DNA from: Fonticula alba ATCC 38817
Taxonomy: Eukaryota; Protista; Nucleariida
Length of the DNA: 15,354 bases
Assembly (NCBI GenBank): GCA_000388065.2
Contig: KB932205.1
Reading direction: 5' to 3' (one strand)
Numbering within the stretch: the first letter of the stretch is position 1; each line of letters starts with the position of its first letter. Under the pieces are notes generated by a model, which did no database searches, was not told the DNA's origin, and saw only the letters and a program-made list of their open reading frames with translations. Shown piece by piece: positions 1 to 15,354 of the stretch. The position numbers and the translations under genes are program-made.

Positions 1-174
1 TCCGCCGTGCAGGCCGGCCAGCGTCCGGGCGCCGACGCGCTGCCGGTCGCCGTGCAGGACCTGGTGCGAGCCGCCTGGCAGGCGGACCCCGCCATGCGGC
101 CCCATGCGGCCATCCTGCGCCAGCAGTGCGCCGCACTCTTTGTGACTGCCGGTGGCCTGGGCATCTCGCTGTGA
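1..174 (+). CDS. 3' end of receptor-like TKL protein kinase (gene A, 5'-truncated by the window edge)
   Basis: Frame 1 reads SAVQAGQRPGADALPVAVQDLVRAAWQADPAMRPHAAILRQQCAALFVTAGGLGISL* (TGA 172-174). It aligns with the gene B C-terminus SAVKAGQRPDTGALP...DLVAAAWQADAGRRPLAASFRQQCVIYYVAAGGLSESP (kinase subdomains X-XI). Nt 1-26 match 8668-8693 at 25/26. Not in the ORF track because no ATG start precedes it in the window. Confidence 0.92.
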   Translation, partial: SAVQAGQRPGADALPVAVQDLVRAAWQADPAMRPHAAILRQQCAALFVTAGGLGISL

Positions 175-595
175 GCCCTCCGGCTGGCATATGTCATGGA
201 CGCTCTCCCCAGCGGGCCCTGTCGAATTGAGTTTCCCGCCCCCGTGCTTTTGGCCTTTGTTTGCTCTTTCTTTGTGGATGGCCAGCTGTTCTGGCGCCCT
301 GTGGATGCCTGGCGAGCATGAGTCGGGCCCACCAGGGCGGCCTGGGGGCACAGCTGTGTGAGTCGCGGTCCCTGGCCTCGGGGGAGGCTGCCCGGCCATG
401 GGCGGACGAATGCATGTGTCTCGATGCGGGGCCCATGACGATGGTCCATGCAGGGGCCCCTTTGTGCCTGGCTGCCGGTCGCCCAGGCATGTGTCCACGG
501 GCCCGGGCCTGGCGCCGAGCAAAAGCCGGGATTGTTCACCCAGAGGCCCAAGGCGATGTCCTTGGGAGAGGCTACCCTGCCAATGGGGTCATATC

Positions 596-810
596 TGTAT
601 GTATGTGTATGTATGTGTATGTATGTGTGTGGTACGTGTGGTGTGTGTGGTGTGTGTGGTGTGTGTGAATGCATCTGTGTGTGTGAATGTATCTGCATGT
701 ATGTACGTGTATGTATGTGTTTGTACTCATGCATGTGAATGTATGTGTATGTATGTGTATGTACTCATGCATGTGAATGTATGTGTATGTATGTATGTAT
801 GTATGTGTAT
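596..810. repeat. Compound (TGTA)n/(TG)n microsatellite containing a 35-bp perfect direct repeat
   Basis: Runs of TGTATG/TGTGTGG. TGTACTCATGCATGTGAATGTATGTGTATGTATGT occurs at 722-756 and 760-794 (period 38). Confidence 0.95.
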
Positions 811-1581
811 GGCAGAGGGGCGCATGGGGGGTGTGGATGCCCTTGACCCGGCATCCATGGGGAGCCCGCGAGCCGGCGGCTGGCGCAGGCCGCCCTGCGA
901 TGGCCGGGGCGGTGCTTTCATCTGCGCGGCCATGCGTGTCACCGGCTCGCAGGGGCAGGCACCACAGGCTAGCGGGATCCTCCAGGCGATGGTGCTGAGG
1001 CCGGGGAGGGGGTTCGGCAATGGCCACCGGCATCGCGCGCGCCCGCGCACGGCCCCCCCTTTTGCGGCCTGGCGCTGCGCCGCACAAGACCCCGTCTGCT
1101 TGGCCTCGACCCCACCAACAGGTGGTCCCAGAGCCAGAGTTCCCTACGCGTCTATCTCTCCCTCCGGTTGGTTTCACCCAATCGCCCCCATGGGCGAGCA
1201 TGCCCAGACGCTCTCCGGCCCCGCGCCCCTTCTGCTCCCGGCCCTTGGACCGCAGGCAGACATGCAACCCGGCGAGGAGGAGGCCGGCAAAGGGCCGATC
1301 GTCGGCCAGCCGCGCAGCGGTCCGGCATATCGCCGACCGACCGGCAAGCGGCCGGCCTCCCAGGCAGATACCCGCTTCCCGTGGCGGCTGCCAGCCATGC
1401 GGTCCTCCCCCACATCCAGGCTGCCGGGGCGGGCCCCGGTGCCGCGGGGCGAATCCTGCGGAAAGCCCCGCCCTCTGCTGGCCAGCCCGTGGGCCTCGCC
1501 CGAAAAAGTGTCCCCCTTCCTCGGCTCCGGAAGCGTGCGTGCCCCTGTCGCCTCGGCCGGGGCGTCGGTCTGGCATCCGGG

Positions 1582-1595
1582 TTTTTTTTTTTTTT
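1582..1595. repeat. poly(T)14 tract
   Basis: 14 consecutive T in GC-rich intergenic DNA. Confidence 0.95.
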
Positions 1596-1747
1596 CCGCA
1601 CTCCGAGGGCGGCCCGGCCCAGCTTGCCAGGAGCCGGCGACCGCGCGGGCGCGTGCGCCCGGCCCCGGCCCTGGACCCGTCCCCATGGCGGATGCGCCTC
1701 CGGGGCCACTCCAGGCATGGTTCGCGCCATCGCGGATGGTCGACTTC

Positions 1748-1768
1748 CGCGCGCGCGCGCGCGCGCGC
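1748..1768. repeat. (CG)10 dinucleotide tract
   Basis: cgcgcgcgcgcgcgcgcgcgc, 21 bp of perfect CG alternation. Confidence 0.95.
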
Positions 1769-2000
1769 CGCCATTGCGGCTCCCCGCGGGCGCGCAGCGC
1801 CTCCAGCAGCCCCGGACCCGAGTTAAGGGCCTCGGCTCCATTAAGCCGGTCCCGGGAGCGCGCGCGCCCTCGGCCCCGGGGGGTCGCGGCCGCGCCATGT
1901 CCCACCGGACGGAGTCGCCATCGAGTGCTCCATAAAAGGGGCTCGGCCGGCCTCAGCTGAAGCCCGGCGTCCTCATGTCCCCGGAAATGACCCTGCTCAA

Positions 2001-2011
2001 GGGGGGGGGGG
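2001..2011. repeat. poly(G)11 tract
   Basis: 11 consecutive G. Confidence 0.95.
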
Positions 2012-2200
2012 ACTGTGAGCCGGGGCGCGGTCCGACCGGGTTCCATGTGAGGCGCCCGGCGGCCGAGAGGGGTGTGAAGAAGGACCGGACGCCGTGGCGC
2101 GCGCGTGTGCGTCGTGTGTGCGTCCGGCCCGGGCCTTTTTTATTTGTCCCACCACCGTGGCGGCGGTGTCCCGCCGGTTTCGGCACCAAAAAAGGCCCCT

Positions 2201-2215
2201 CCCCCCCCCCCCCCC
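2201..2215. repeat. poly(C)15 tract upstream of the gene B start
   Basis: 15 consecutive C, ending 86 nt before ATG 2301. Confidence 0.95.
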
Positions 2216-2300
2216 TTCCCTGCCTACCTGCCAGCCTGCTCTCCCCTCCTCGCGTGGCCCTGCCTCGCCTCGCGGCCTTCTTCACGGCCATCCTCATGGA

Positions 2301-2423
2301 ATGCGGGCCCCTGTGCGCCCCGCTGGACCACGGCGCCGGGGGCCCCTCCTGTCGCCATGCGCCTGGCTCGGGCTGCTCGTGGCGCTGGTGACGCTGCTGC
2401 TCGCGGCGCCGGCCTCGAGCGCC
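2301..2423 (+). other. Predicted signal peptide of gene B
   Basis: MRAPVRPAGPRRRGPLLSPCAWLGLLVALVTLLLAAPASSA: basic n-region, hydrophobic h-region, small residues before D42. Paralogous to the gene C N-terminus. Confidence 0.75.
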
Positions 2424-5400
2424 GACGAGATGCTCCTCTATGCCGGACCCCTGCGCATGCAATTTTCCGACTCCATCATCGGATACTTTACTCCCTTTCG
2501 GTCGCCATCATTTGCTGTCGTGCATCAAATGCAGGGCATCCTGCACACCGTCTGGCAGGACAAGCTCGACCCTATGGACGTCGACTACCGTTGGGGGGGC
2601 TTCTTCTCGGACGTCCTGAGGGACTACTTGCGGACGGCGCGCGGCATTGCCGGCCTCGGGCCCGGCACCCGGCTCCTGATCCTGCCCAACCCGGTGGAGG
2701 TCACCCTGCCGACGGTGATCGAACTTTCGGCCAGGGAGGTTGCCCTGCAAAGTTCCCCGCATGTGGCCCTGCTCCCGAGCCCCGGGCGGACCAAATACCT
2801 GGCGGCCTTGGCCACCTCGAAGGATGCCGCCGACATGCTTGTCGAAGCGACCCTCCTCACGGGCCAGCCGCCGGAGTACTTCCTCCTGCACTTGACGCAC
2901 TCGTCGCCGGTGGCGACCCGGGCCCTGGGCAGGCTGGACCACCTGGGCGGCGGTTCGCTGCTGGCGACCCCGGCGTTCGAGGGGGGTTTTTTCTTTGTCA
3001 AAGGCACCCGCATCGGCCGGATAAACGCCCTCACGGGCGCCGTGACGGCCTTGTCGGTGGTCCTGCCGGCGCCGGCCGTGGAGGTGCTTGCCACGCGCCT
3101 GCTGACCGACCAGGCCTCCTGCCCGGAGGCGGACCTGATCGTCGTGCTGGACGACGGGACCCTCATGGTGCTGCTTTGCGTCAACTCGGTCATCCCGGAA
3201 GCCCCCCCGATCGCGTCGCATGCCCTCGCGCTGCCCGGCCGCACCGGCACCGGCACCGGCCGGCTGCTCAATCCCGGGCTGCCCTCCATCGGCCAGGATC
3301 GCCTGCCCTTCGTGTACTACATGTGGGAGTCGGCCGAAGCCGGGGCCAGCCTCTGGCGCATGGACCTCCGGCTTTCGCCGCTGGCCTGGACCAAGGTCAC
3401 CCTGCCGGCGGTGGTGCCGGCATCCGGCATCCTGGACCAGGCGCACCTGCTGCGCCTGTATGCCGAGGGCCTCCAGGACCGGTGGGCCGTGGTCGTCAAC
3501 CATGTGGCCCTCCTGGAGGCCGAGGACTTTGGCTGCTCCACCGACCCGACGATCTCCTGCGCGGGCCCCAACGGCCCGAATGGCACCCAACTGGGCTGGA
3601 CCTGCAGGCTCGGCCACACGGAATCGCCCTACTCCGAGGTCGGGCGCCTGTGCTCCGGGTGTCTGGATGGATTCTACCCCGATGAGGCAGTCTGTGCGTG
3701 GGGGCCCCCCCTCCCTGGCTTCCTGTCCATGCGCGCGCCGACCTGCCGGTTGTCCTTTTGCTGACCATGCGTGGGCGGTGGTTGGCTGGCTGGCTGACCT
3801 TTCTTTTTTCTCCCCCCGCCCCCCCGCCTGCCCCCCCTGGGGCTGTGTTTCGACCGGGTGCCTGGGCTCGTGCGCCGGGCGCATTCCAGCCACGCGCCCC
3901 TGCGCCCCCTGCCCGCCTGGGTGCCTGGGCTGCGGAGGCGGCAGTTGCCTCCTCTGCGAGGAGTCCCTCCTGTTGGAGCCCTCGGGCCCGGGGCAGGAGG
4001 CCCGATGCGTGGCCGCCTGCTCGGCCGGCTTCCAGCGCGTGGCCAAGGGCTGCCTGCCGGACGAGCGCCCCGCTCGGGCTGAGGTGGCCCTGCCGGCCAC
4101 GCTGGTGGCCATCCAGCAGCCGGACGCGGTGTCCGCCCTTGGCGAAACCCACCTGGCCATTTGCGACGACGGGAAGCTGTGTCTCCCGGAGCCGGTGGAG
4201 ATCAAGCCCTTCGCCCCGCGCCGGGGTCTGCTGCTGACCGACCAGCACAATGGGATCTTCCTGGCCCGGAGCCAGGATGCCAGCCAGGCCGATGTCCTGA
4301 GCCCGGTGCAGATCGAGCTGACGGTGCCCGGGACGCTGTTCGAACGGCCGACGCAAGCCGTCATCGAAGTGGGCCCCTTCTTCGGGGCGTCCGGCGCGAA
4401 GCTGGCCCTGGTCTTCTGCCGGGGCCCGGAGCGTTTGTGGATGCTGCATGTGTCCTGCCCGAACTTCACCAGTGGCTCGCCCAATGCCTGGGGCCCCTTC
4501 GTGGCGGAGCACTACATTCCCCTGGCCGAGGCGATGCCCGGCTGCCAGACCCTTCGCCGGCTGGACGCGCACACCGTGGTCATCCACCATGACGTGGCCG
4601 GCGGCGGGCTGCTGACCATCAACGAGGACTTGTCCCACTCGTACGACGGCCTCGGCGCATCCGAGGTGGTACACCTGCCTGGCCCGGAGGCCGTGCCGTC
4701 GGCCGGCTGGCCCCGGGACCCGGGGTGGGTTTTCCTCCTGGAGCCGGGCAACATGGCCACCCTCTACCCCCGGGGGATGCATGCGCTCGGCAACCTGGCG
4801 CAGCACATCCGAGGCAAGGCCCTGGCCCGGCGGGACCCCTGGCACCCGTGGACGCGGACGCTGCTGCTGAGCACGTCCGTCCCGCACGCCCGCGGGCGCC
4901 AGGCCTTCGAGCTGGCCCTCGTGCGGTTCCAGGCCGGTCTCTGGGAGGCGGCCCTGCTGCCCGGCGGCATGCTGATGCATGGCCGGACGTGGGAGCTGCC
5001 GGTGTCGGGCCAGGTGCTGGCCCGGGTGCCGGGCACCGTGGCCCCGGCCCCGGTAGATGTGTCCCTCCTGGCGGTGGACTTCCTGCCCGGGACCGAGCAC
5101 CCCTCCGGCTTGGTGCTGCTGGCCCCGAGGCTGGTGGGCCTGGCGCTCCTCCGGTGCCCGGCCACCGGGGGGGCCTGCTTCCTCCTGCCGGGGCGCCTGG
5201 CCCCGGTGTCGTTGGATTGGCTCGGGTCCGCCAGCGTGGCCCTGCTCCCGGGCGGCCCGGCTCCCGGCGATGTGCTGTCCCTGCTGGCCGTGGCCCCGAG
5301 CTCAAGCCCCCTGTCGGGGGTCTACCGGTTGGCATTCCAGTCAACCTGCCCGGAGTCCACCTTCGGCCCGGAGTGCCGCGCATGCGATCCCCTTTGCCGG

Positions 5401-8400
5401 GAGTGCACCGGGCCCGGGCCGGGGGACTGCACCGCATGCTGGGCCTGGAATGGCTCCAGCCCGGGCGTGTGTCTGCCCGGCTGCCCCGGCGGCCAGTACC
5501 CCAGCACGGACGGCCTGTGTGGCTGCCACGCCACGTGCACCGTGTGTCGCACACCCAGCGACCAAAGCAACACCTGCGAGGTGTGCAACCCCGGCTTCGC
5601 CCCCCTGCCCCAGGGCCTGGAGGGGCACCGGTGCTTCGCGTGCGACAGCACCTGCGCCGAGTGCACGGCGCCGCAGGACCCGGGCGCCTGCTCGCGCTGC
5701 CCGGCCGGCATGTGGCTCCATGCCGGGGCATGCCTCGGCCACTGCCCGAGTGGCACCTGGCCCGATGCCAGTGACAATACCTGCCAAGCGTGCGTGCCCG
5801 GCTGCGGGCTGTGCAGCTCGAGCACGACCTGCTCCCAATGCATGCCGTCCTACTTCATGGCCCAGGAGCCGGGGCAGCCGGCCGGCCAGCTCCACTGCAT
5901 GAAGTGCCATCCGACGTGCGCATTCTGCGTCAAGGCCGAGAGCTGCACCGCCTGCCGGTCGAACATGGTCTTCCTGGACCCGGACCCGACGAAGCCCTCC
6001 TTTTGTGGCTCGAGCTGCGCGCCCGGGGAATTCCGCCGCATGGGCCGGTGCGCCGTATGCGCCGAGTCCTGTGCCCTGTGCACCGGCGAGGCCGACCACT
6101 GCGACGTGTGTGCCGAGGGCCACTTCCGGCCGGACCCCGCGTCCCCGAAGTGTGCCCCTTGCCCGGCCGGGTGTGCCTCCTGCACCGGCACCCGGTGCCT
6201 GGCCTGCGTGCCGGGGCTCTTCCTCGACCGGCAGCTGGGGGGCCGGTGCGTGGCCGCCTGCCCGGCCGGCATGTATGCCGATGTCGAAACGTGCCAGCCG
6301 TGCGACGTCACCTGCCTGACGTGTGCCGGGCCCGGGCCCGGGCTCTGCACCGGCTGTGCCGAGGGCCTGCAATTGGCCCGGCTGGGGGCCGACTTCGGGG
6401 CATGCGAGTCCGCCTGCCCGGAGGGGCGGTTCTGGCCCGCGGCCGGGGGCAGCTGCCTGCCCTGCGACCGGGCCTGCGCCACGTGCATCGGCCCGAGCGA
6501 TCGCGACTGCTGGCGCTGCTCCGGCTCGGATGTCCTGCAAGATGGCCAGTGCATGCAGGAGTGCGCCTCGGGCCATGTGGCCGTTGGCGGCCGGTGCCTG
6601 CCCTGCCATCCCTCGTGCCAGGCGTGCGCCGGGGTCCGGTCGACCGAGTGCCTGCCGGCCTGCCCGGGGGATCTGCTGGCCCTGCCGGCCGGCCAGTCGC
6701 CGATGCGCTGCGTGCCGGCCTGCCCGGCCGGCTACAGCACCACGGCCGGCGGCTGCGTCAAATGCGGCGACCACTGTGCCAGCTGCCCGGACGGGGCCGG
6801 CTCCTGTGCCCTGTGCGACCGGGGGAAGCTGCTGGCCGAGTCGGCCTGTGTCAGTCACTGCCCGGCCCGGTCTTCGCCGGTGGGCGGCCAGTGTGTCACT
6901 TGCCATGGCCTGTGCCGGGCCTGCCATGGCCCGGGGGCCGACCAGTGTGCCTCCTGCGACGCGGAGGCCCCCCTGTTGGCCGGGGGGGCCTGCTATGCGG
7001 CCTGCCCGGCCGGCTTCTTCCCCCAGGCGGACCTCTGCCTACCCTGCAATGGGACGTGCGCCGCTTGCCGGGGCCCGGCCGCCACCGAGTGCACCTCCTG
7101 CACCGGTGCCCTGGCCTGGATGGATGGGGCCTGCCTGGGGGCCTGCCCGGCCGGGTGGTTCCCGGAGAGCCATGTGTGCAAGCGCTGCCCGGCCTCCTGC
7201 GACACGTGCACCCAGCCGCTGACCTGCGCCACCTGCCGGCCGGGGGAGCTGCTCGATCTGGCCGGGGCGTGTGTGGCCTCCTGCCCGGCGGGGTCGCACC
7301 CGTGCCTCGACTCCGGGCGGTGTCTCGCCTGCCCGGGGGGCTGCGCCGCGTGCGAGTCGGCCAATGGCACATGCACTGCCCAGTGCACCGGCTGTCGGGA
7401 TGGCTTCGTCCTGTCGGCCGGGCGCTGCGTGCAGGCCTGCCCGGCCGGCGAGTTCGCCCCGCCGGGCCAGGCCTCCTGCGCCCCGTGCCAGGCCTCCTGC
7501 AAGACATGCTCCACGGACGGGGGGCTGTGCACCAGCTGCCCGGGCGGCCTGCTGCTGACGAAGGCCGGCACGTGCGTCGGCGCATGCCCGGCCGACTCGT
7601 GGCCGGTTGACGGTGCCTGCCTTGCCTGTCCGGATGGCTGCCAGCGGTGCGAGGCTGGTCCCGAGCCGCCCCGCTGCGCGGTGGCCCCCGGCGGTGCGCT
7701 CACCTGTCCCGGCATTCCGACATGCGCCCAGTGCGCGCCGGATCTGTGGCTCCTGGCGGGCGCGGCCTGCGTTGAGGCATGCCCCGTCGGGCACTTCCCG
7801 GACTGGCAGGCCACGGTGCCGGCATGCGCCGCCTGCCATGGGACTTGCTCGGCAGGCCCCTGCATCGGCCCGGCGGCCGAGGACTGCAGCGGCCCGGGGC
7901 CCGGGACCGGGGCCAGACGCCTGGGCCTGGCGATCGGGCTCTCCGTGGGCCTGCTGCTGCTGCTGATTCTGCTGATCCTGCTGGTGCTGTTCTGCGTCCG
8001 CCGGCGCGCCGGCAGGGCTGCCACCGGCAAGGACCTGGCGGACGCCGAGGACGCCACCATGCTGAACACCATCGTGGAGCTGGCCCTGCCCGGGGCCATC
8101 CTGGTCGGTGTCGACACGGACTTCCGGCCGCTGGACGAGCAACTGGGCGCCGGGACCCAGGCGTCGGTGTATGCGGCGCAGGCGGTCGGGGCCGGCATTG
8201 TGGCCCGGCTGGGCTGCCCGGACGTGGTGGCCGTGAAGAAGATGCGGACCGAGGCCATGNNNNNNNNNNNNNNNNNNNNNNNNNNNNNNNNNNNNNNNNN
8301 NNNNNNNNNNNNNNNNNNNNNNNNNNNNNNNNNNNNNNNNNNNNNNNNNNNNNNNNNNNNNNNNNNNNNNNNNNNNNNNNNNNNNNNNNNNNNNNNNNNN

Positions 8401-8856
8401 NNNNNNNNNNNNNNNNNNNNNNNNNNNNNNNNNNNNNNNNNNNNNNNNAGCACCGACCGGTCGTCGGTCCTCGTCAACACCCTGCCCGAGCTGAATGCCA
8501 TGACCGTGCGGTACGCGGCGCCGGAGGTGATCGGCGCCTTCCAGCGGGGCATTTCGCTGGACCGGGCGGCCTTCCTGCCGGCGGACATCTTCAGCGCGGC
8601 GGTGATGTTGCTGGAGTGCCTCACGCGCGCGGTCCCCTGGCCGGACCTGGACATGCAGGGGATTGTATCCGCCGTGAAGGCCGGCCAGCGTCCAGACACC
8701 GGAGCCCTCCCCACGAGCGGTGCCTTTTCCAATGCCGGTGATTTGGTGGCCGCCGCCTGGCAGGCTGACGCTGGTCGGCGGCCGCTTGCCGCGTCCTTCC
8801 GCCAGCAATGTGTCATCTACTATGTGGCGGCCGGCGGCCTGTCCGAGTCACCGTAG
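2301..8856 (+). CDS. Gene B: giant single-pass receptor-like TKL protein kinase with furin-like Cys-rich repeats, join(2301..3693,3890..8856), about 2119 aa including 63 gap codons
   Basis: ATG 2301 opens a signal-peptide-like N-terminus. Exon 1 (ORF 2094..3764 frame) splices in frame to ORF 3220..8856 through a GT-AG intron, giving ...GFYPDEAVS-TRPCAPCPPGC.... It then shows CxxxCxxC repeats, a 26-aa hydrophobic helix followed by RRR, and kinase motifs LGAGTQASVY, VAVK, TVRYAAPE, DIFS and WQAD..RRP. Stop is TAG 8854-8856. Third codon positions are strongly G/C. Confidence 0.9.
3694..3889 (+). other. Spliceosomal intron of gene B (196 bp, phase 1)
   Basis: Donor GTGCGT at 3694. Branch-like TGCTGAC 3759-3765 and GGCTGAC 3792-3798, the latter followed by a pyrimidine tract. 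Acceptor TTCCAG ends at 3889 and is the only AG in the intron. Splicing restores the frame and removes the exon-1-frame stop at 3762-3764. Confidence 0.9.
5347..7887 (+). repeat. Furin-like Cys-rich repeat stalk of gene B (17 full + 1 partial CxxxCxxC units)
   Basis: Units begin CDPLCREC, CHATCTVC, CDSTCAEC, CVPGCGLC, CHPTCAFC, CAESCALC, CPAGCASC, CDVTCLTC, CDRACATC, CHPSCQAC, CGDHCASC, CHGLCRAC, CNGTCAAC, CPASCDTC, CPGGCAAC, CQASCKTC, CPDGCQRC and partial CHGTC. Confidence 0.9.
7921..7998 (+). other. Transmembrane helix of gene B
   Basis: LGLAIGLSVGLLLLLILLILLVLFCV followed by RRR (positive-inside rule, type I topology). Confidence 0.92.
8122..8800 (+). other. Cytoplasmic protein kinase domain of gene B (TKL-like, Ser/Thr-type signature, catalytic core hidden in the gap)
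   Basis: Subdomain I LGAGTQASVY, II VVAVK (K codon 8236), VIII MTVRYAAPE, IX ADIFSAAVMLLE, XI WQADAGRRP. HRD and DFG are not visible. Confidence 0.88.
8260..8448. other. Assembly gap (189 N)
   Basis: Run of N inside the kinase domain. The reading frame is the same on both sides. Confidence 1.
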
Positions 8857-9732
8857 GCCACCGCCAGGGGGATGCCCCCCGGGGCCTCCTCCTCCCGATA
8901 ATACACCCATCCTCCCCATCCACCCCCCTGTCAAGACGCCCTTCCTGCCGGCAATGCCTCGGTGCCTTTCTCCGCCGGCGGCTGGGGCCGGGATCCGCCG
9001 ACAGGACAGAGCCGGTCCGGGGAGGCGCGGCGTGGTCTTGGCCGCACAAGAAGCCGGTCCAGCGCCGGGAGCCCCCCGCCCCCTCTTGGCGATCGTGCAC
9101 CTGGGCCACGGGCCAGCACACCACCAAGCCGCGGGTCAGCCCGCGCGCGCACCAGACTCCCGAAGTGGGCGCCCAGACCAGATCCCCCGGCCCGACCCAT
9201 TGCCCGGTCTTCCGCTCGCCCGCCCGTTCGGCCCTTTCCCCTCTGTCCGGCCCGATCGCGAGAGACAGAACAAGGTCCTCGCGAAGGGCCGGGCCGAGAC
9301 CCATCTCCACCGAATCAAGCACCAGCGCAATCGGCATTTCCGCCCCGTGCCATGCCTTCGGGCCCGAGAGGAGAGCCGGCCACCACCGGCATGCTGGGGA
9401 TTTCGGCACCCATGGATGACACATGCCAAACCGACCACCGTCAGGCGAGTCGCCGGCGCCCGGCGCCGACCCTGCCCTCCCCCGTCGGGGCGCGCGGTCC
9501 CTGCGCCGAGGCCAACACACCGACGCCGAGCCGCGGCGGGCCCCGGCGTGCTCCCAGCCCCGCCACGGCCGCCGACGCACGCCCGCCTGCCAGGGCCGCC
9601 GCCCTCGCGGACCCGCAACCACGGCCCACCAGGCTTGCACTGTGGGCAGTCGGGCAGGAGGCGCCCGGCAGGCAGGCAGGATGCGCTGACCGGCGATCCG
9701 GCCCGGCCGGGCCCGAAACGCCCGCGTCGGTT

Positions 9733-9751
9733 GTTTGTTTGTTTGTTTGTT
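9733..9751. repeat. (GTTT)4-5 microsatellite
   Basis: gtttgtttgtttgtttgtt. Confidence 0.9.
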
Positions 9752-10079
9752 ATTGAGTTTTCCCAAACGATGAGGCGAGGTACCAACGCTCGCCCGCGCC
9801 GGGCGGGTGAAGTGTTTCAACGGTCCCCGCGCGCCCTGGGCGTTGCGTGCCTGCAGAGAGTTCCCTCGGCTGGAGGGGCCCATGTCCCGGCTCTGCCTGG
9901 CCGTGTGTCGGCTCGGTCGTCCATCAGGGCCTTCGCGCGGGGCGCCTCGAGCCCCCTGCCTCGGCCGGAACAACACCCCCAGGCCGGGAGGGGGCGTGTT
10001 TCAGGGGACCACACAATGCGGGTTGGGCTTCGGGCTGCTGGGAATAAACCCGACCCCCCTAGTTGGATGGCTTTCCTCC

Positions 10080-10114
10080 CACACACACACACACACACAC
10101 ACGCGCGCGCACAT
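10080..10114. repeat. (AC)11(GC)4 alternating purine-pyrimidine tract
   Basis: cacacacacacacacacacacacgcgcgcgcacat, 35 bp of unbroken alternation. Confidence 0.95.
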
Positions 10115-10183
10115 CCCCCCTCGCGCACATCCCCCCTCGCCCATACCCCTCCTCGCCCACCCCCCCTCGCCCACCCCTCCTCG
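10111..10183. repeat. Degenerate C-rich tandem repeat (5 units of about 14-16 bp ending CCTCG(C))
   Basis: ACATCCCCCCTCGC-GC-ACATCCCCCCTCGC-CC-ATACCCCTCCTCGC-CC-ACCCCCCCTCGC-CC-ACCCCTCCTCG. Confidence 0.85.
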
Positions 10184-10246
10184 GGGACCCGCTCTTCCAT
10201 CGCCCCGCCAACTGCCCGTGTCTCGTGTGCAAGCCCGGCTGCCGGG

Positions 10247-10360
10247 ATGAGACGATCGACGGCCGGCGCGCGACTTCGGGCCCGCCCGGGCCCCCTGCTG
10301 CCCTGGCTGCTGGCGGCGCTGCTGGCGGCGCTTGTGCATCTGGCGGCCCCGGCCCCCGGG
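10247..10360 (+). other. Predicted signal peptide of gene C
   Basis: Arg-rich n-region, GPLLP-WL, hydrophobic LLAALLAALVHL, then AAPAPG. Mirrors gene B. The cleavage site is approximate. Confidence 0.75.
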
Positions 10361-13300
10361 CCGGACTTCTTCCTGCACATGTGCCCGCGCCAGAGCCTCC
10401 CGTCGGGCAATGTGCTCGGGGTGTTTGCCGAGCCCACCGGCACCTCGATGGTGGCGACGCTGTCGGACCAGGCCGCGGTGCACATCTTTCCCCAGCTCCA
10501 GCAGGCCAATGCGCCGGCCGGCCAGTCGGGCCTGGACGGGTGGACCGACGCCCTACGCTTCGGGGCCGTCTTCTCCACCGCACACGAAGCAAGCCTGGCC
10601 TGCGCCCGGCCGACGGAGCTGGACACCGGCTCCCAGATGATGATCCTGCCAGTGCATGGCCAGCAGGCGCCGCTGATTGTCGAGCACACCCCATTGCAGG
10701 TGGCCCTGATGGACGACAATCGGGTGCTCACCCTCCCCGCCCCGGCCACCGAGCTGCTGGCCGGGCTGGCCATCGACCGGGACACGGCGCTGCTGCTGGG
10801 GCTGGTAGGCGCCCGGGACGCGCCCACCCGGTCCATCAGCCTCTTCCTGCTGCAGCGGGGCGCATCTGCCCTCTTGCCGGTGTCGGTGGATGTGGGCCCG
10901 GTCGGCAACCCGGTGCTGGTGGCCCCGATGGCGGCCACGGCTCGCGGGTTCCATGTGCACGCCGGCCACAACCTCCACCGGATCGTGTACAATAGCGGCA
11001 GCAGCCGGGCCGGCGTCACAACCCAAAGCCACCCGGGCATTCGGCAGCTGGCGGCCACGCGCCTGCTGTCCGATGGGCCGCCCGCCTCCGATTGGCCCGA
11101 CAGCGGGGACTTGGTGTTGGTCCTGTCAACCGGCCTGGTGGAGGTGATGCCCTGCCGTGAGCTGCCGTGCCCCGAGTCGAGCCGGATTCTGCTGGATCTC
11201 CTTCCCGGCGGCTCCGGCTCCTCCGGGTGCTTCCTCAATCCCGGCGTCGAAGCCATGGGCCGGGCACTTTCGCTGCTGTACTATCTGGAACTGCCGGAGC
11301 CGCCGCGGCCGCCGGTGCTCTGGCGCATGGATGCCCTGGCCAAGCCCAAGGTCTGGAATCGCGCGGTGCTTCCGCCGGGCGTCCGCGACCTGGACCGCGC
11401 GCAGCTGGTGCTCCTTGACGCCGGGCCGGCCACCACCCGCTGGGGGCTGCTGGCCGGCGGCCGGATCTACTTGGAGTCCGGCGACATGGCATGCCATGTG
11501 GACAGCAGCATCAGGTGCGACGGCTCGGCCGGGGCCACCGGATCGCCATTGGGCTGGTCCTGCGCCCCGGGCCGGGCCGAGTCGCCCTTCGCAAGGGACG
11601 GCAGCCTGTGTGATGGCTGTGCGCAAGGCTGGTACCAGGACCGCGGTGACGGTGCGTTTGGCGGCCCCTGATGCCGGGGGCCGGACGGCCTCCCCCGCCC
11701 CGGCCTCCTTCCCGTGCCCGCCACGCGCCATGCTGAGGATGCTAACAATGCGCTCGTGGCCTGATGCCGAACGACGTGGGCCCTGCCGCGGGTATGTTGG
11801 TTCGGTGCGCTTGCCTGTGCCCGTGCCTCGGCCTGTCCTTCGCCGGGGCCACGGTCCATGTGTCTTGGGGGGCGGGGGGGACTTGGGCCGCACGCTGTCC
11901 GGCGACCGGGCGCCGCTGCCTCGCGGTATGCCGGCCGGTGCGCGGGCTTCCGCATGGCGACCTGCGACGCGCGGCTGCCGGACCGACCGCCGGCCCAATC
12001 CAGAGGACGCCCCGTGCAAGGCCTGCAGCCCGGGATGCCGGGTGTGCGATGCCGGCAACTGCCTGGTATGTGAGGACGACCGCCGGCTGGAGGGCTCCGG
12101 CGCCGGGGGGAGCACCATCTGCGTGGCTCAATGCTCGGAAGGCCATGTGCTGCTGGCCGGCGTGTGTCAGCCGGCTGGGCAGGCGCGCCCGAGCAGCCGC
12201 CTGGCCCTGCCGGCCGTGCACCCGCTGCCGGACGTCCACCCGACCACCCCGATCGGCGAGGTGGTGGCCATCGGCGAGACGCACCTGGCCCTGCTGCCGA
12301 TCACCCGGGAGGTGGGCCTCCCGGCCGGGGTCCTGGCCAGCCCCCTGGGCCCGCGGGCGGGCGTCCTGCTGGCCATGTCCACCGGCCAGATGCTGCTGGA
12401 ACCGGGGTCCAACATCGGCCAGCCCGCCGAGGCCCAGACCCCCCCGACGCCGGTGCCGCACTTTGCCGACCACAAGGTGGAGCACGCCATGTCCTTCGCC
12501 GAGGTGGGCCCGCTGCCGTGGCCCGACCGGCCGGCCGGCACCCTGGGGCTGGGCTACCTGATGTGCGACACTTCCGGGGTCCTGTGGCAGCTGCCCTTCC
12601 GGTGTGAGGTGAGCTCCGACAGGGGCGATGCCGGCTGCACGAGCCTCACACGGTCCAGCCAGCCGACCAGCATGGGACCCTGCCGGGGCGTGCGGCTGGC
12701 CGGGGCCCGGCAGGTGGCCGCCATCGACCAGCAGGGCTGGGTGACTCTGTTCACGCTGCTGCTGCCGGCCGGCTTCCAGGAAGTGGCCCCGGCCAGGCCC
12801 TTTGGCATTGGCCTGCCCCCGGGCTCGCGGCCCCTCATGGCGGTCCCCGTGCCGGAGTGGCTGCTTCTCGGCGGGACAGACGCCACGCCGGGGGGGACCG
12901 CCTCGCCGGGGTCCCTCTTCGCCGGGGACCGCCGCCTGACGGCCCTGGCCGATCGGGCTCTGGCCGACCCGGGCGCCTGGAGCCAGGCGGTCCTTCTGCC
13001 CTCGGGCAGGCTCGCCAGCGCCCGGCGCGTGGACTTGGCCCTGTCGCTGGTCCGGCCATCCGGCGAATGGGAAGCCGCCCTGCTCCCGGGCGACATGGTC
13101 CCCCATGGCCGGACCATTGACCTGGCCCTCACCCGCCAGGCGATCGGCCAAGTCCCCGGGGCCCCCATCGACCCGAGCGCCACCATGGTCCTGGGCACGG
13201 CACTGGCCGGGTGGCCGGGCTACCCGGCCGGGCTGCTGCTGCTGGCCGACCACCTTGTCGGCCTGGCGCCGCTCGATTGCTCGGCCACCGGGCCGGCCCC

Positions 13301-15354
13301 GTGTGTCTTCCTGCCGGCCTCCTTCGCCGAGCTGGCCCCCGGGCTTCGGGGGCTCGGCCGCCGGGGGGCGGTGCGCCGGCCCGTCGGCCCGAATGGCCCG
13401 CCGGGACTGGTCCTCTCTCTGTGGGCCATGACCGATGACCACGTGGCGCCCGTGCGCTTGGACATTTTCTCCACCTGCCCGCCCGGGACCTTCGGCGTGG
13501 AGTGCCAGCCCTGCGACGCCATTTGCCAGGCATGCCACGGCCCGGGGCCCGCCGACTGCACCGTCTGCCGGGCCTGGCTTGCCGGCCAGCCGGAGACCTG
13601 TCTGGCCGAATGCCCTCCCGGGCAGTACCCCGATCTGCTCACCGGCCAATGTGGCTGCCATGCCGAGTGCAAGCAGTGCCAGGCCCAGGCGTCTGGCGAA
13701 TACCAGTGTGTTGCCTGCCACCCGGGGCAGGCCCTCGCCCCGGGGGACAGCCGCCCCGACCGATGCCATGCCTGCCACGACACATGCGCCGAGTGTGCGG
13801 TCCCCGGCGACCCGGCCACCTGCACCGCCTGCGGCCCGGCGCGCTTCCTGCATGCCGGCATCTGCCATACGGAATGCCCTTCGGGCCTCTGGGCCGACGC
13901 CCGAGCCGGCCAGTGCATCCCCTGCCCGGGTGGCTGCGCGTCCTGCTCCTCGGCCGACATGTGCTCCGCCTGCCAGCCGGGCCACTTCCTGCCCCCCGGC
14001 TCGGGCACATGCCTGCCCTGCGACGGCTCGTGCGGCACCTGTGCCGAGGCCGGCGCCTGCGCCACCTGCCGGCCGGGGCTGGTGTTCCTGCAGCCCGACC
14101 CGCAGGTGGCCTCCCTGTGCGCGAGCACCTGCCCCCCGGGCGAGTATGTCGGGCCCAACCGATGCACCGAGTGCCAAACCTCCTCGCCCTGTGCGTCGGT
14201 GCAGCCGACCGGTGCCAGGTGTGCGGCCCGGGACACCGGTGGGCTGGGACCCCGCCGGCAGCCGGCGCCACGGGCCAGTGTGTCCCCTGTGATCCGGGTT
14301 GCGCCTCGTGCACGGCCGACCGGTGCCTGGCCTGCGAGCCGGGGCTCTTCCTCGACTCACACGGTGACTGCGTGAGCACCTGCCCGGATGGGACCTTCGC
14401 CGACGCCGAGTCGTGCCAGCCGTGCGACCTGAGTTGCGCCACCTGCGTCGGGGGCGGCGCCGACCAGTGCGCCAGCTGCGCGGCCGGGCTGGACTTCGTG
14501 CCGGCCAGCGCCTCGGCCGGCACATGCGTGTCGGGCTGCCCGGAGGGCCAGCACCGGGACCGTGTCTCCGGCGACTGCTTGCCATGCGACGCGGCGTGCG
14601 CCACGTGCAACGGCCCCTCGGACAAGGACTGCTGGCGCTGCGCCAGCGGCGTGCTGCAGGACGGCGACTGCGTGCAGCACTGCGCCGCGAAGCATGTGGC
14701 CCTGGCCGGGCGGTGCCTGCCCTGCCATGTGTCCTGCGACCAGTGCGTGGGTGTTCGGCTGACCGAGTGCCAAGCTTGCCCGGGGGATCTGCTGGCCCTG
14801 CCGGCCGGCGAGTCGCCGATGCGCTGCGTGCCGGCCTGCCCGGTGGGCTACAATGCCTCGGGCGCCGGGTGCGCCAAGTGCGGCGACCACTGTGCCAGCT
14901 GCCCCGGCCAGCCGGACGCCTGCGCCCTGTGCGACCGGGGCTGGCTGCTGGACGCCCCGCTGTGCGTGGCCTCCTGCCCGGACGGGTCTTCGCCCCAGGG
15001 CGGCTTGTGCGCCACCTGCCATGGGACCTGCGCCACCTGCTACGGTCCGGGCTCCCAGCATTGTCTCAGCTGTCGGCCGCGCTGGCCCCTGCAAGTGGAC
15101 GGGGCCTGCTTTGCCGTGTGCCCCCGGGGGACATTCCAGACCGGCCAGACTTGCCTCCCCTGCAACGCCACCTGCACCGCCTGCAAAGGCCCCGCCGCCG
15201 ACCAATGCGAGAGCTGCCCGGCCGACCGGTTCCATCTGAACGGGACCTGCATGCTGGAGTGTCCGGGCGGGTTCTTTGCCGACGAGGGCGCCTGCCGCCC
15301 CTGCCAGGCCACCTGCCTGACGTGCGACTCGCCGAGCATGTGCACCTCCTGTGC
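10247..15354 (+). CDS. Gene C: paralogous giant furin-repeat receptor-like protein, 3'-truncated by the window edge, join(10247..11651,12004..>15354) with an apparent frameshift at 14184/14185
   Basis: ATG 10247 begins signal peptide MRRSTAGARLRARPGPLLPWLLAALLAALVHLAAPAPG. Exon 1 (ORF 8720..11671 frame) splices in frame to ORF 11157..14375, giving ...GWYQDRGDE-DAPCKACSPGC.... After 14185 the homologous Cys repeats continue in another frame (from 14186: ALCVGAADRCQVC...CDSPSMCTSC), open to the window end. Colinear with gene B throughout. TM and kinase are inferred to lie beyond the window. Confidence 0.88.
11652..12003 (+). other. Spliceosomal intron of gene C (352 bp, phase 1)
   Basis: Donor GTGCGT at 11652, branch consensus TGCTAAC at 11740-11746, acceptor ATCCAG ending at 12003. 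Same protein position and phase as the gene B intron, and splicing restores the frame. Confidence 0.9.
13476..15354 (+). repeat. Furin-like Cys-rich repeat stalk of gene C (13 full units plus the start of unit 14)
   Basis: Units begin CDAICQAC, CHAECKQC, CHDTCAEC, CPGGCASC, CDGSCGTC, CQTS[C]ALC, CDPGCASC, CDLSCATC, CDAACATC, CHVSCDQC, CGDHCASC, CHGTCATC, CNATCTAC, CQATCLTC. Confidence 0.9.
14184..14185 (+). pseudogene. Apparent 1-nt deletion (TGC to TC) causing a frameshift in gene C: either a disabling mutation or an assembly error
   Basis: Sequence TCC TC GCC CTG TGC where the repeat pattern and gene B (ESCALC) require TCC TGC GCC CTG TGC. The uncorrected frame stops at 14373-14375. Confidence 0.5.

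What the first reader, a model, noticed from the sequence alone, without database searches (positions are those of the whole stretch)
1..15354. Tandem array of at least 3 giant modular receptor kinases: a candidate polymorphic surface-recognition system
Seen: three same-strand paralogs separated by 2.1 and 1.4 kb. The two long copies share the layout signal peptide - domain 1 - Cys linker - domain 2 - furin-repeat stalk, and B continues into TM and kinase. Gene A's tail matches gene B's kinase tail. Established: clustered receptor kinases with diversified ectodomains serve non-self or self recognition elsewhere (plant receptor-like kinase clusters, and polymorphic Dictyostelium TgrB1/TgrC1, which are not kinases). 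Inference: this could be a receptor repertoire for prey, pathogen or kin sensing, with a variable tip held out on a long disulfide-bonded stalk. The family looks like the Fonticula alba TKL expansion. I know of no functional characterization of it, but could not search.
Basis: partly seen in the sequence, partly recalled or inferred. Interest (0 to 1): 0.75.

Follow-up and report, generated by a model that had tools for sequence, protein, structure and literature searches.

The report
Fonticula double-propeller receptor kinase array
The window holds the tail of one gene and most of two more from a family of roughly 60-90 giant surface receptor kinases found here only in the amoeba Fonticula alba. 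The genes are real, but what they sense is untested, and assembly gaps hide the catalytic core of all three kinases.

Summary
The window is Fonticula alba scaffold C5:100146-115499. It carries three same-strand paralogs: the last 57 codons of gene A, gene B (public model H696_03231) and the 5' two-thirds of gene C. The spacers are 2126 and 1390 nt.

B and C share one layout: signal peptide, head 1, one furin-like module split by a conserved phase-1 intron, head 2, and a cysteine-rich stalk. B's stalk has about 17 furin-like repeats and continues into a membrane span and a TKL kinase. AlphaFold2 models both heads as 7-bladed beta-propellers. Neither head matches Pfam or any solved structure by sequence.

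A head-1 profile found 62 proteins among 1.84 billion. All 20 that I sampled are F. alba.

The gap (8260-8448) removes B's catalytic core. Gap-free paralogs have 112-113 codons there, not 63. The gap flanks are 100% identical to neighbours' flanks, so continuity is plausible but unproven. Gene C has a 1-nt deletion at 14184/14185.

The heads are saturated at synonymous sites, while stalks and kinases are not (C/D 98-100% identical over about 750 nt). The tip-to-membrane gradient therefore largely reflects gene conversion.

"Polymorphic recognition" is untested. This scan has already reported the family on other windows of this genome.

The parts
1..174 (+). Gene A: last 57 codons of the kinase C-lobe plus stop. 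The rest of A lies upstream beyond a 1621-N run.
   Evidence: translation; 56% identity to the B tail, E 8e-18. L001 8380-10000 is all N; 97.5% nt identity to the tail of the gene upstream of A.
175..2300 (.). A-B intergenic spacer (2126 nt) with a TG/TA-rich microsatellite at 592-811.
   Evidence: TRF. No tRNA or Rfam hit. The long ORFs here are low-complexity products of 72% GC.
2301..3693 (+). Gene B exon 1: signal peptide (about 2301-2420), head 1 as a 7-bladed beta-propeller (about 2439-3390), and a conserved Cys cap (about 3396-3693).
   Evidence: AF2 pLDDT 83.5, 28 strands. VIA Z 14-17 to 7-bladed propellers. No Pfam hit. Invariant Cys, Trp and Asp columns.
3694..3889 (+). Gene B intron: 196 nt, phase 1, GTGCGT...CAG.
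   Evidence: The public model P0001 joins the exons at the same junction. A phase-1 intron sits at the same position in genes A, C and D.
3890..4059 (+). Gene B furin-like Cys linker between the two heads.
   Evidence: Sequence. Colinear with gene C.
4060..5340 (+). Gene B head 2: a second 7-bladed beta-propeller with no detectable sequence relation to head 1.
   Evidence: AF2 pLDDT 76.7. VIA Z 17-20. Foldseek hits are propellers. hhalign of A1 vs A2 gives probability 0.5%. No PDB sequence hit.
5341..7920 (+). Gene B stalk: 860 aa, 140 Cys (16%), about 17 furin-like/CXXC repeats.
   Evidence: 50 CxxC motifs, 16 CPxG motifs. Pfam VSP 42.8 bits (above gathering) and Furin-like_2 27.2 bits.
7921..7998 (+). 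Gene B transmembrane helix, followed by RRR.
   Evidence: Sequence. The segment is 55-89% identical in 97 genomic matches.
7999..8259 (+). Gene B juxtamembrane region and kinase N-lobe (Gly loop and VAVKK lysine), ending at the gap.
   Evidence: Bases 8040-8116 are 100% identical to the pre-gap sequence of the gene upstream of A.
8260..8448 (.). Assembly gap (189 N) replacing the alphaC helix, hinge, catalytic loop and DxG motif. The true length is probably about 336-339 nt.
   Evidence: Five gap-free paralogs have 112-113 codons here, with HCD/HGD-LKPxN and GDLG. The public model splices across the gap.
8449..8856 (+). Gene B kinase C-lobe (activation segment, APE) through the stop codon.
   Evidence: Pfam Pkinase E 2e-5, profile positions 158-258. 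The first 123 nt are identical to the post-gap sequence of gene C in L002.
8857..10246 (.). B-C intergenic spacer (1390 nt) with C-rich short tandem repeats at 10106-10183.
10247..11651 (+). Gene C exon 1: signal peptide, head 1 propeller and Cys cap.
   Evidence: Own-genome match at C5:110638-111789, E 4.5e-37.
11652..12003 (+). Gene C intron: 352 nt, phase 1, GTGCGT...CAG.
12004..15354 (+). Gene C exon 2: Cys linker, head 2 (to 13469), then stalk from 13470. It runs off the window into a 1950-N run. A 1-nt deletion between 14184 and 14185 shifts the frame from 3 to 2.
   Evidence: Pfam GF_recep_IV E 3e-11. L002 1-1950 is all N.

Best explanation
These are three neighbouring members of a Fonticula alba family of type-I receptor Ser/Thr (TKL-group) kinases.

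Shown:
- Each gene encodes a signal peptide, two beta-propeller heads separated by one furin-like module, a stalk of furin-like repeats (about 860 aa in B), one membrane span and a cytoplasmic kinase. The two heads have no detectable sequence similarity to each other. The kinase's closest solved relatives are RAF kinases.
- Every gene has its own pair of heads, no more than about 43% identical to any other.
- Stalk, membrane span and kinase are kept similar among paralogs.

Inferred mechanism:
- The propeller pair at the tip binds a gene-specific extracellular ligand, most likely a cue from bacterial prey or the environment.
- The disulfide-rich stalk holds the heads away from the membrane.
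- Ligand-driven clustering or a conformational change activates the kinase, which signals by Ser/Thr phosphorylation. Paralogs carry D-L-K-P-x-N catalytic loops, and the species has no tyrosine kinases.

The tip-to-membrane similarity gradient comes largely from gene conversion or unequal exchange among neighbouring stalks and kinases, acting on anciently diverged heads. That same homogenisation explains why the assembler left gaps in every kinase core of this stretch.
For: - Organism and gene: (B is H696_03231, 100% identity).
- Architecture.
- Propeller folds: pLDDT 83.5 and 76.7; Z 14-17; Z 17-20.
- Family size and clustering: 94 head-1 matches, 18 of them on C5 between 44 and 275 kb, all on the + strand; 97 matches.
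- Species restriction of head 1: (62 hits, all E <= 3e-14, none weaker); 20 of 20 sampled are F. alba.
- Kinase type: Pkinase E 3e-33 on a gap-free paralog; best PDB hits are B-Raf and RAF1; HCD/HGD-LKPxN, GDLG.
- No tyrosine kinases in Fonticula: PMC4342544.
- Concerted evolution:
  - C/D 98-100% nt identity over about 750 nt of stalk, against about 50% in the heads. A/D reach 97% and A/C 94% in adjacent 150-nt windows.
  - the same gene pairs have head dS 0.93-1.34 but kinase dS 0.37-0.64.
  - dS falls from about 1 in the heads to 0.14-0.75 in the mid-stalk.
  - gap flanks are 100% identical between neighbours.
- Common origin of the whole architecture: a phase-1 intron at the same position in four genes.
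Against: - No ligand, localisation, kinase-activity or expression data exist for any of these genes.
- B's catalytic loop and DxG motif are unread. Because the gap flanks are identical to neighbours' flanks, the C-lobe scaffolded after the gap could belong to another copy.
- Gene C carries a frameshift and may be a pseudogene.
- Only 23 of 62 annotated family representatives show a catalytic loop. This may be due partly to gaps and partly to real kinase-less members.
- Some 100% identities could be assembly artefacts (collapsed repeats) rather than gene conversion.
- Head dN/dS of 0.6-1.1 is uninterpretable at saturation.
- Long ORFs are weak evidence of constraint in a genome that is 72% GC.
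Confidence: 0.78

Rival explanations
1. This is a polymorphic self/non-self (kin) recognition system used during aggregation. Under it, head alleles differ between strains and matching heads gate cooperation.
For: The family is large, clustered and tip-divergent. The organism aggregates into fruiting bodies (established knowledge). Polymorphic TgrB1/TgrC1 is a precedent in Dictyostelium (established knowledge).
Against: No allelic data exist, since only one genome is available. The heads are ancient and unique per gene rather than recently diversified. Known kin-recognition loci are a few highly allelic genes, not about 90 fixed paralogs. No Ig/IPT-type adhesion domains were detected.
Confidence: 0.08
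2. These are prey-recognition or phagocytosis receptors, like the Entamoeba transmembrane kinases. Each head pair would recognise a different bacterial surface pattern and trigger engulfment or chemotaxis.
For: The overall design matches Entamoeba TMKs: signal peptide, CXXC-rich ectodomain, TM, kinase, and a large family. One of those, PATMK, acts in phagocytosis (PMC2211552). Pfam VSP-type CXXC repeats are present. The kinases nearest to B are non-RD (HCD/HGD), a class associated with innate immune receptors across kingdoms (PMC8463890). F. alba is bacterivorous (established knowledge).
Against: No functional data exist. The family is mixed RD and non-RD: 10 HRD, 12 HCD, 1 HGD. Entamoeba TMKs have no propeller heads. 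The similarity is one of design; homology was not tested.
Confidence: 0.35
3. The window's genes are partly non-functional or chimeric. Gene C would be a frameshifted pseudogene, and B's head and stalk would be scaffolded to a neighbour's kinase fragments. The apparent complete receptor kinase would then be an assembly construct.
For: There is a 1-nt deletion plus two substitutions within 8 nt in C, against an otherwise identical 200-nt tract of gene D. The gap flanks of B are 100% identical to those of the neighbouring genes. N runs interrupt the kinases of at least six family members examined. The public B model splices over the gap.
Against: The order N-lobe, gap, activation segment, C-lobe is what one gene would give. 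A, B and C each have a distinct C-terminal tail at the expected distance before the next gene. Several paralogs are assembled gap-free with the full architecture. The clustered differences in C could be a consensus error.
Confidence: 0.25
4. This is a variant surface coat or adhesion family. The Cys-rich ectodomain would be the main functional element, as in Giardia VSPs, and the kinase would be accessory.
For: The Pfam VSP match is above gathering in B's stalk. Many annotated members lack a kinase (and earlier scan note s1-065625, not tested here).
Against: TM, juxtamembrane and kinase are the most conserved parts of the genes, which argues that signalling matters. The stalk is homogenised rather than varied, the opposite of a variant coat.
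Confidence: 0.07

Closest known systems
Entamoeba histolytica transmembrane kinases (TMKs, e.g. PATMK/TMK96)
   Same: Both are large families in an amoeba. Both are type-I proteins with a signal peptide, a CXXC/furin-like cysteine-rich ectodomain, one TM and a cytoplasmic kinase of mixed Ser/Thr-Tyr-like character (PMC2211552). B's stalk matches the Pfam VSP model.
   Different: TMK ectodomains are described as CXXC repeats only. The Fonticula proteins add two large beta-propeller heads at the tip. Homology of the kinases or stalks was not tested. No function is known here.
EGFR / insulin-receptor family ectodomain logic (L1 - Cys-rich - L2 - Cys-rich - TM - kinase)
   Same: Both alternate globular domain, furin-like module, globular domain, furin-like region, then TM and kinase. 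There are Pfam GF_recep_IV and Furin-like_2 matches.
   Different: The globular domains are 7-bladed propellers, not L domains (no Recep_L_domain hit). The stalk is far longer, about 17 repeats. The kinase is TKL Ser/Thr-type (DLKPxN), not a tyrosine kinase, and Fonticula has no TKs (PMC4342544).
MET/RON and plexin-type receptors (Sema propeller - Cys-rich PSI - stalk - TM - signalling domain)
   Same: Both have a 7-bladed propeller at the tip of a single-pass receptor, followed by a small Cys-rich module and a stalk.
   Different: There is no Sema or PSI Pfam match, and no Sema structure among the top fold matches. This family has two propellers rather than one, and a different kinase group.
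Plant receptor-like kinases (RLK/Pelle, TKL group) in tandem clusters
   Same: Both are TKL-group single-pass receptor kinases expanded into tandem arrays with diverse ectodomains. Many members here are non-RD, like plant immune receptors (PMC8463890).
   Different: The ectodomains are unrelated (no LRR, lectin or LysM). Kinase relatedness to the RLK/Pelle clade was not tested. The closest solved kinases are RAFs.
Dictyostelium TgrB1/TgrC1 kin-recognition pair
   Same: Both are surface proteins of an aggregative amoeba proposed to act in recognition.
   Different: Tgr proteins are Ig/IPT-repeat proteins without kinases. They are a few highly allelic genes. No polymorphism data exist here, and the domains are unrelated.

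Membership tests
Eukaryotic protein kinase, TKL group | Protein kinase domain (Pfam Pkinase / PK_Tyr_Ser-Thr) | tested here: met
   B C-lobe: Pkinase E 2e-5, below gathering because only half the domain is assembled. Gap-free paralogs 81-86% identical to B's TM/N-lobe: Pkinase 115.7 bits and PK_Tyr_Ser-Thr 87.7 bits.
Eukaryotic protein kinase, TKL group | Catalytic motifs: VAIK Lys, HRD catalytic loop, DFG, APE | tested here: inconclusive
   B has VAVKK and AAPE. Its catalytic loop and DFG lie in the gap at 8260-8448. Five paralogs show HCD/HGD-LKPxN and GDLG.
Eukaryotic protein kinase, TKL group | Closest relatives are TKL kinases | tested here: met
   All of the top 60 PDB sequence hits of paralog L004 are B-Raf or RAF1, E 1.5e-16 to 3.6e-13. 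NCBI names several family members 'TKL protein kinase'. No kinome phylogeny was run.
Receptor tyrosine kinases (EGFR/InsR type) | Tyrosine-kinase catalytic loop (HRDLAARN / HRDLRAAN) and L-domain heads | tested here: not met
   Paralogs have DLKPxN. There is no Recep_L_domain hit and the heads are propellers. A published survey found no TKs in Fonticula (PMC4342544).
Furin-like / VSP-type cysteine-rich repeat proteins | Repeated CXXC-containing modules of about 50 aa with 8 Cys | tested here: met
   140 Cys in 860 aa and 50 CxxC motifs. VSP 42.8 bits against a cutoff of 31.4. GF_recep_IV 43.7 bits against 29.5 in gene C.
WD40-repeat propellers | WD40 sequence repeats (Pfam WD40) | tested here: not met
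   There is no Pfam hit in either head and no PDB sequence hit with head profiles at E <= 1. Only the 7-bladed fold is shared.
Sema-domain receptors (MET, plexin) | Sema propeller plus PSI domain | tested here: not met
   There is no Sema or PSI Pfam hit. No Sema-domain chain appears in the top lists of four fold searches.
Entamoeba TMK family | Signal peptide - CXXC-rich ectodomain - TM - kinase; sequence homology to TMKs | tested here: inconclusive
   The architecture is met. Homology to TMK sequences was not tested directly. Propeller heads are not described for TMKs (PMC2211552).
Polymorphic allorecognition systems | High allelic polymorphism concentrated in the recognition domain | not testable with these tools
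   Only one F. alba genome is available. Divergence between paralogs is not allelic polymorphism.

The most novel reading that the evidence does not exclude
A lineage sister to fungi, a group usually considered to lack receptor kinases (my own knowledge, not checked here), independently built a repertoire of about 60-90 surface receptor kinases. Each would carry its own double beta-propeller sensor head, seen so far only in Fonticula alba. Together they would act as a germline-encoded recognition repertoire for bacterial prey or other non-self cues. Gene conversion would keep the signalling chassis uniform while each head keeps an old, distinct specificity.
Probability: 0.3. Interest if true: 0.75.

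Novelty: new variant of a known kind. Interest (0 to 1): 0.5.

Why it matters
Single-pass receptor kinases with cysteine-rich stalks are known from animals, plants and Entamoeba. A large receptor-kinase repertoire in Holomycota, the fungal side of the opisthokonts, has not been described in any paper I could find. Its two sensor heads have no relatives detectable outside this species. If the heads bind prey or environmental ligands, this would be an independent invention of a germline receptor repertoire in an aggregative amoeba, and a tractable case of heads staying distinct while the signalling chassis is homogenised.

There is also a practical point for anyone using the public proteome. Assembly gaps sit in the kinase cores of this array. 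At least one public model (H696_03231) splices across a gap and so lacks the catalytic core. Kinome counts and "kinase-less" calls for this family are therefore unreliable until a long-read assembly exists.

Tried and rejected
- Bridging the gap with public data. The gap could not be filled, and expression evidence (a Logan-derived family fragment, P0038) could not be followed.
- Relatives of the heads outside Fonticula.
  - The head-1 profile against 1.84 billion proteins gave only the family itself.
  - Head 2 of B found only B itself.
  - The head-2 profile found nothing among proteins of 235-747 aa. This is a length-limited test.
  - The ESM Atlas gave no score of 0.9 or above.
  - PDB profile searches were empty.
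- Heads 1 and 2 as an internal duplication. hhalign gave probability 0.5%, so this is not detectable.
- dN/dS as a test of diversifying selection. The heads are saturated, so the ratios are uninterpretable.
- A subtelomeric location. The arrays lie toward scaffold ends, but no (TTAGGG)4 exists in the assembly, and repeat arrays themselves break scaffolds. I rejected this as evidence.
- Non-RD status as a family hallmark. The family is mixed: 12 HCD, 10 HRD, 1 HGD.
- Other genes or RNAs in the spacers. There is no tRNA and no Rfam family.
- Joining exons. Exons were searched separately by reference. The only joined sequence seen was the public protein returned by a tool.
Full report
**What is in the window.**
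- The sequence is 72% GC. It is scaffold C5:100146-115499 of a 31.3-Mb, 214-scaffold assembly.
- A word search with gene B's exon 2 returned one protein at 100% identity: hypothetical protein H696_03231 of Fonticula alba, 2056 aa.
- On the + strand I find the following:
  - The last 57 codons and stop of gene A (1-174).
  - Gene B: Met 2301, exon 1 to 3693, a 196-nt phase-1 intron (GTGCGT...CAG, 3694-3889), and exon 2 from 3890 to the stop at 8854-8856.
  - Gene C: Met 10247, exon 1 to 11651, a 352-nt phase-1 intron at 11652-12003, and exon 2 running off the window.
- The public model of B uses the same start and the same exon junction.
- Genes A and D, the flanking genes read from L001 and L002, have a phase-1 intron at the same position. 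The whole architecture therefore has one origin.
- I searched exons separately by reference and did not build a joined model.

**The gap, tested first.**
- The 189 N at 8260-8448 lie inside B's kinase, between the VAVKK strand and the activation segment.
- The ORF reads through only because 189 is divisible by 3 and both flanks happen to be in frame 1.
- Five gap-free paralogs have 112-113 codons (336-339 nt) between the same two points. These codons contain the alphaC Glu, an HCD or HGD catalytic loop (D-L-K-P-x-N) and a GDLG motif.
- About 150 nt more than the written gap is therefore probably missing. B's catalytic competence cannot be read.
- The public model simply joins the two flanks and so lacks the catalytic core.
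- The order of the flanks (N-lobe, then activation segment and C-lobe) is what one gene would give.
- However, bases 8040-8116 are 100% identical to the pre-gap sequence of the gene upstream of A. The first 123 nt after the gap are identical to the post-gap sequence of gene C.
- Continuity is therefore plausible but unproven.
- The window is also bounded by N runs: 1621 N before it and 1950 N after it. A's TM and kinase and C's stalk end, TM and kinase N-half are unassembled. The kinase of the gene upstream of A is collapsed to 20 N.

**Gene C.** The frame changes from 3 to 2 because one base is missing between 14184 and 14185. Two substitutions lie just upstream. The comparison is with a tract of gene D that is otherwise identical over 200 nt. 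This is either a real frameshift or a consensus error, and I cannot tell which.

**Domains.**
- Pfam recognises only the kinase C-lobe and the cysteine-rich repeats (VSP, Furin-like_2, GF_recep_IV).
- B's stalk is 860 aa with 140 Cys, about 17 repeats.
- For the two heads I aligned B with paralogs fetched from the genome (A1 with 22 sequences, A2 with 17) and predicted structures.
  - Head 1: pLDDT 83.5, pTM 0.84, 28 strands plus a C-terminal Cys cap.
  - Head 2: pLDDT 76.7, pTM 0.79.
- Both heads match only beta-propellers. Foldseek probability is 1.0 with TM 0.3-0.5. VIA-align gives Z 14-17 and 17-20 over about 280-320 residues at about 4 A.
- The match lists are flat and dominated by 7-bladed WD40-type propellers, so no particular family stands out.
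- Profiles of the heads hit no solved structure by sequence.
- The two heads are not detectably related to each other.

**Family and distribution.**
- Head 1 of B has 94 matches in its own genome at 24-39% identity. Most lie in same-strand arrays, including 18 on C5 between 44 and 275 kb.
- The TM/N-lobe has 97 matches. About fifty cover nearly the whole 113-aa query, at 51-89% identity.
- A head-1 profile searched against 1.84 billion representative proteins gave 62 hits, all at E <= 3e-14 and none weaker.
- All 20 proteins I looked up, including the five weakest, are F. alba. Their public names are 'hypothetical protein' or 'TKL protein kinase'.
- Head 2 found nothing outside the family in two more limited searches.
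- The kinase of a gap-free paralog is closest to B-Raf and RAF1 among solved structures.
- A published survey found no tyrosine kinases in Fonticula (PMC4342544).
- Three literature searches found no description of this family.

**The gradient.**
- Heads are 22-43% identical between any two of 22 genes, with a median of 29%.
- For A, B, C and D, dS is about 1.0-1.3 in head 1 and 0.8-1.15 in head 2, which is saturated. It is 0.5-1.3 in the first part of the stalk and 0.14-0.75 in the mid-stalk.
- For four genes on four scaffolds, head dS is 0.93-1.34 but TM+kinase dS is 0.37-0.64. Four-fold-site identity is 0.66-0.77 in the kinase against 0.38-0.56 in the heads.
- C and D are 98-100% identical over about 750 nt of stalk. 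A/D reach 97% and A/C 94% in adjacent 150-nt windows. B stays at or below 83%.
- Lower synonymous divergence toward the membrane, in mosaic tracts, indicates gene conversion or unequal exchange rather than only stronger purifying selection.
- Head dN/dS values (0.6-1.1) mean nothing at saturation.

**Interpretation.**
- The genes are single-pass receptor TKL kinases. The most likely mechanism is ligand binding by the propeller pair, transmitted through a rigid stalk to a Ser/Thr kinase.
- The closest known analogue by design is the Entamoeba TMK family. One member of that family acts in phagocytosis (PMC2211552).
- The kinases nearest to B are non-RD, a class linked to innate immune receptors (PMC8463890). 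The family as a whole is mixed, with 12 HCD, 10 HRD and 1 HGD.
- Prey or environmental sensing is therefore my favoured ligand class. Kin recognition and allelic polymorphism are untested.

**Relation to earlier scan notes.** The scan has reported the same family on other windows of this genome. I re-derived the following independently, and they agree with those notes:
- the propeller folds;
- the restriction to F. alba;
- the copy number;
- the gene-conversion signal.

New for this window are the gap analysis of H696_03231, the frameshift in gene C, and the finding that all three kinase cores here are unassembled.

Noticed in passing
window 8260-8448 and public protein P0001: The public gene model H696_03231 treats the N gap as if it were an intron. 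It joins the VAVKK-side flank directly to the activation segment, so the deposited protein lacks the catalytic core and has no precomputed Pfam kinase domain. Only 23 of 62 family representatives show a catalytic-loop motif, so similar artefacts may be common.
   Followed up: partly
L002 about 8700-9998 (gene D stalk, G000:C5 about 124200-125500): Gene D's stalk has its own 'CTEC...SCALC' module and then a second one inside a block that is 98-100% identical to gene C's stalk. D's first stalk segment is 400 codons against about 231 in A, B and C. The extra block could come from unequal exchange or from an assembly chimera.
   Followed up: partly
L002 1951-2510 (gene C tail beyond the window): After the 1950-N run, gene C's C-lobe reads in one frame for about 65 codons. 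It then continues to its stop in another frame after a stretch of unrelated sequence. This may be an extra intron or a disruption that B does not have.
   Followed up: no
window 8821-8853 and 139-171; ends of L004, L006, L008, L009: Most of the proteins examined end with a conserved hydrophobic-A-(A/S)-G-G-L motif a few residues before the stop. It could be a docking or regulatory tail.
   Followed up: no
G000 scaffolds C3, C4, C5, C8, C9: On the five scaffolds of 1 Mb or more, about 36 of 40 head-1 matches lie within 275 kb of a scaffold end. No (TTAGGG)4 is present in the assembly. The bias may simply reflect scaffolds breaking at repeat arrays.
   Followed up: partly
window 592-811; 10106-10183; introns of genes A and D in L001 and L002: There is a TG/TA-rich microsatellite in the A-B spacer and C-rich 14-16-nt repeats just upstream of gene C's start. 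The conserved intron of genes A and D contains CA and CT dinucleotide-type repeats.
   Followed up: no
L001 1548-1567 (G000:C5 about 91693-91712): The gene upstream of A goes from its juxtamembrane region straight into its C-terminal tail across a 20-N gap. Its whole kinase domain is missing from the assembly.
   Followed up: no
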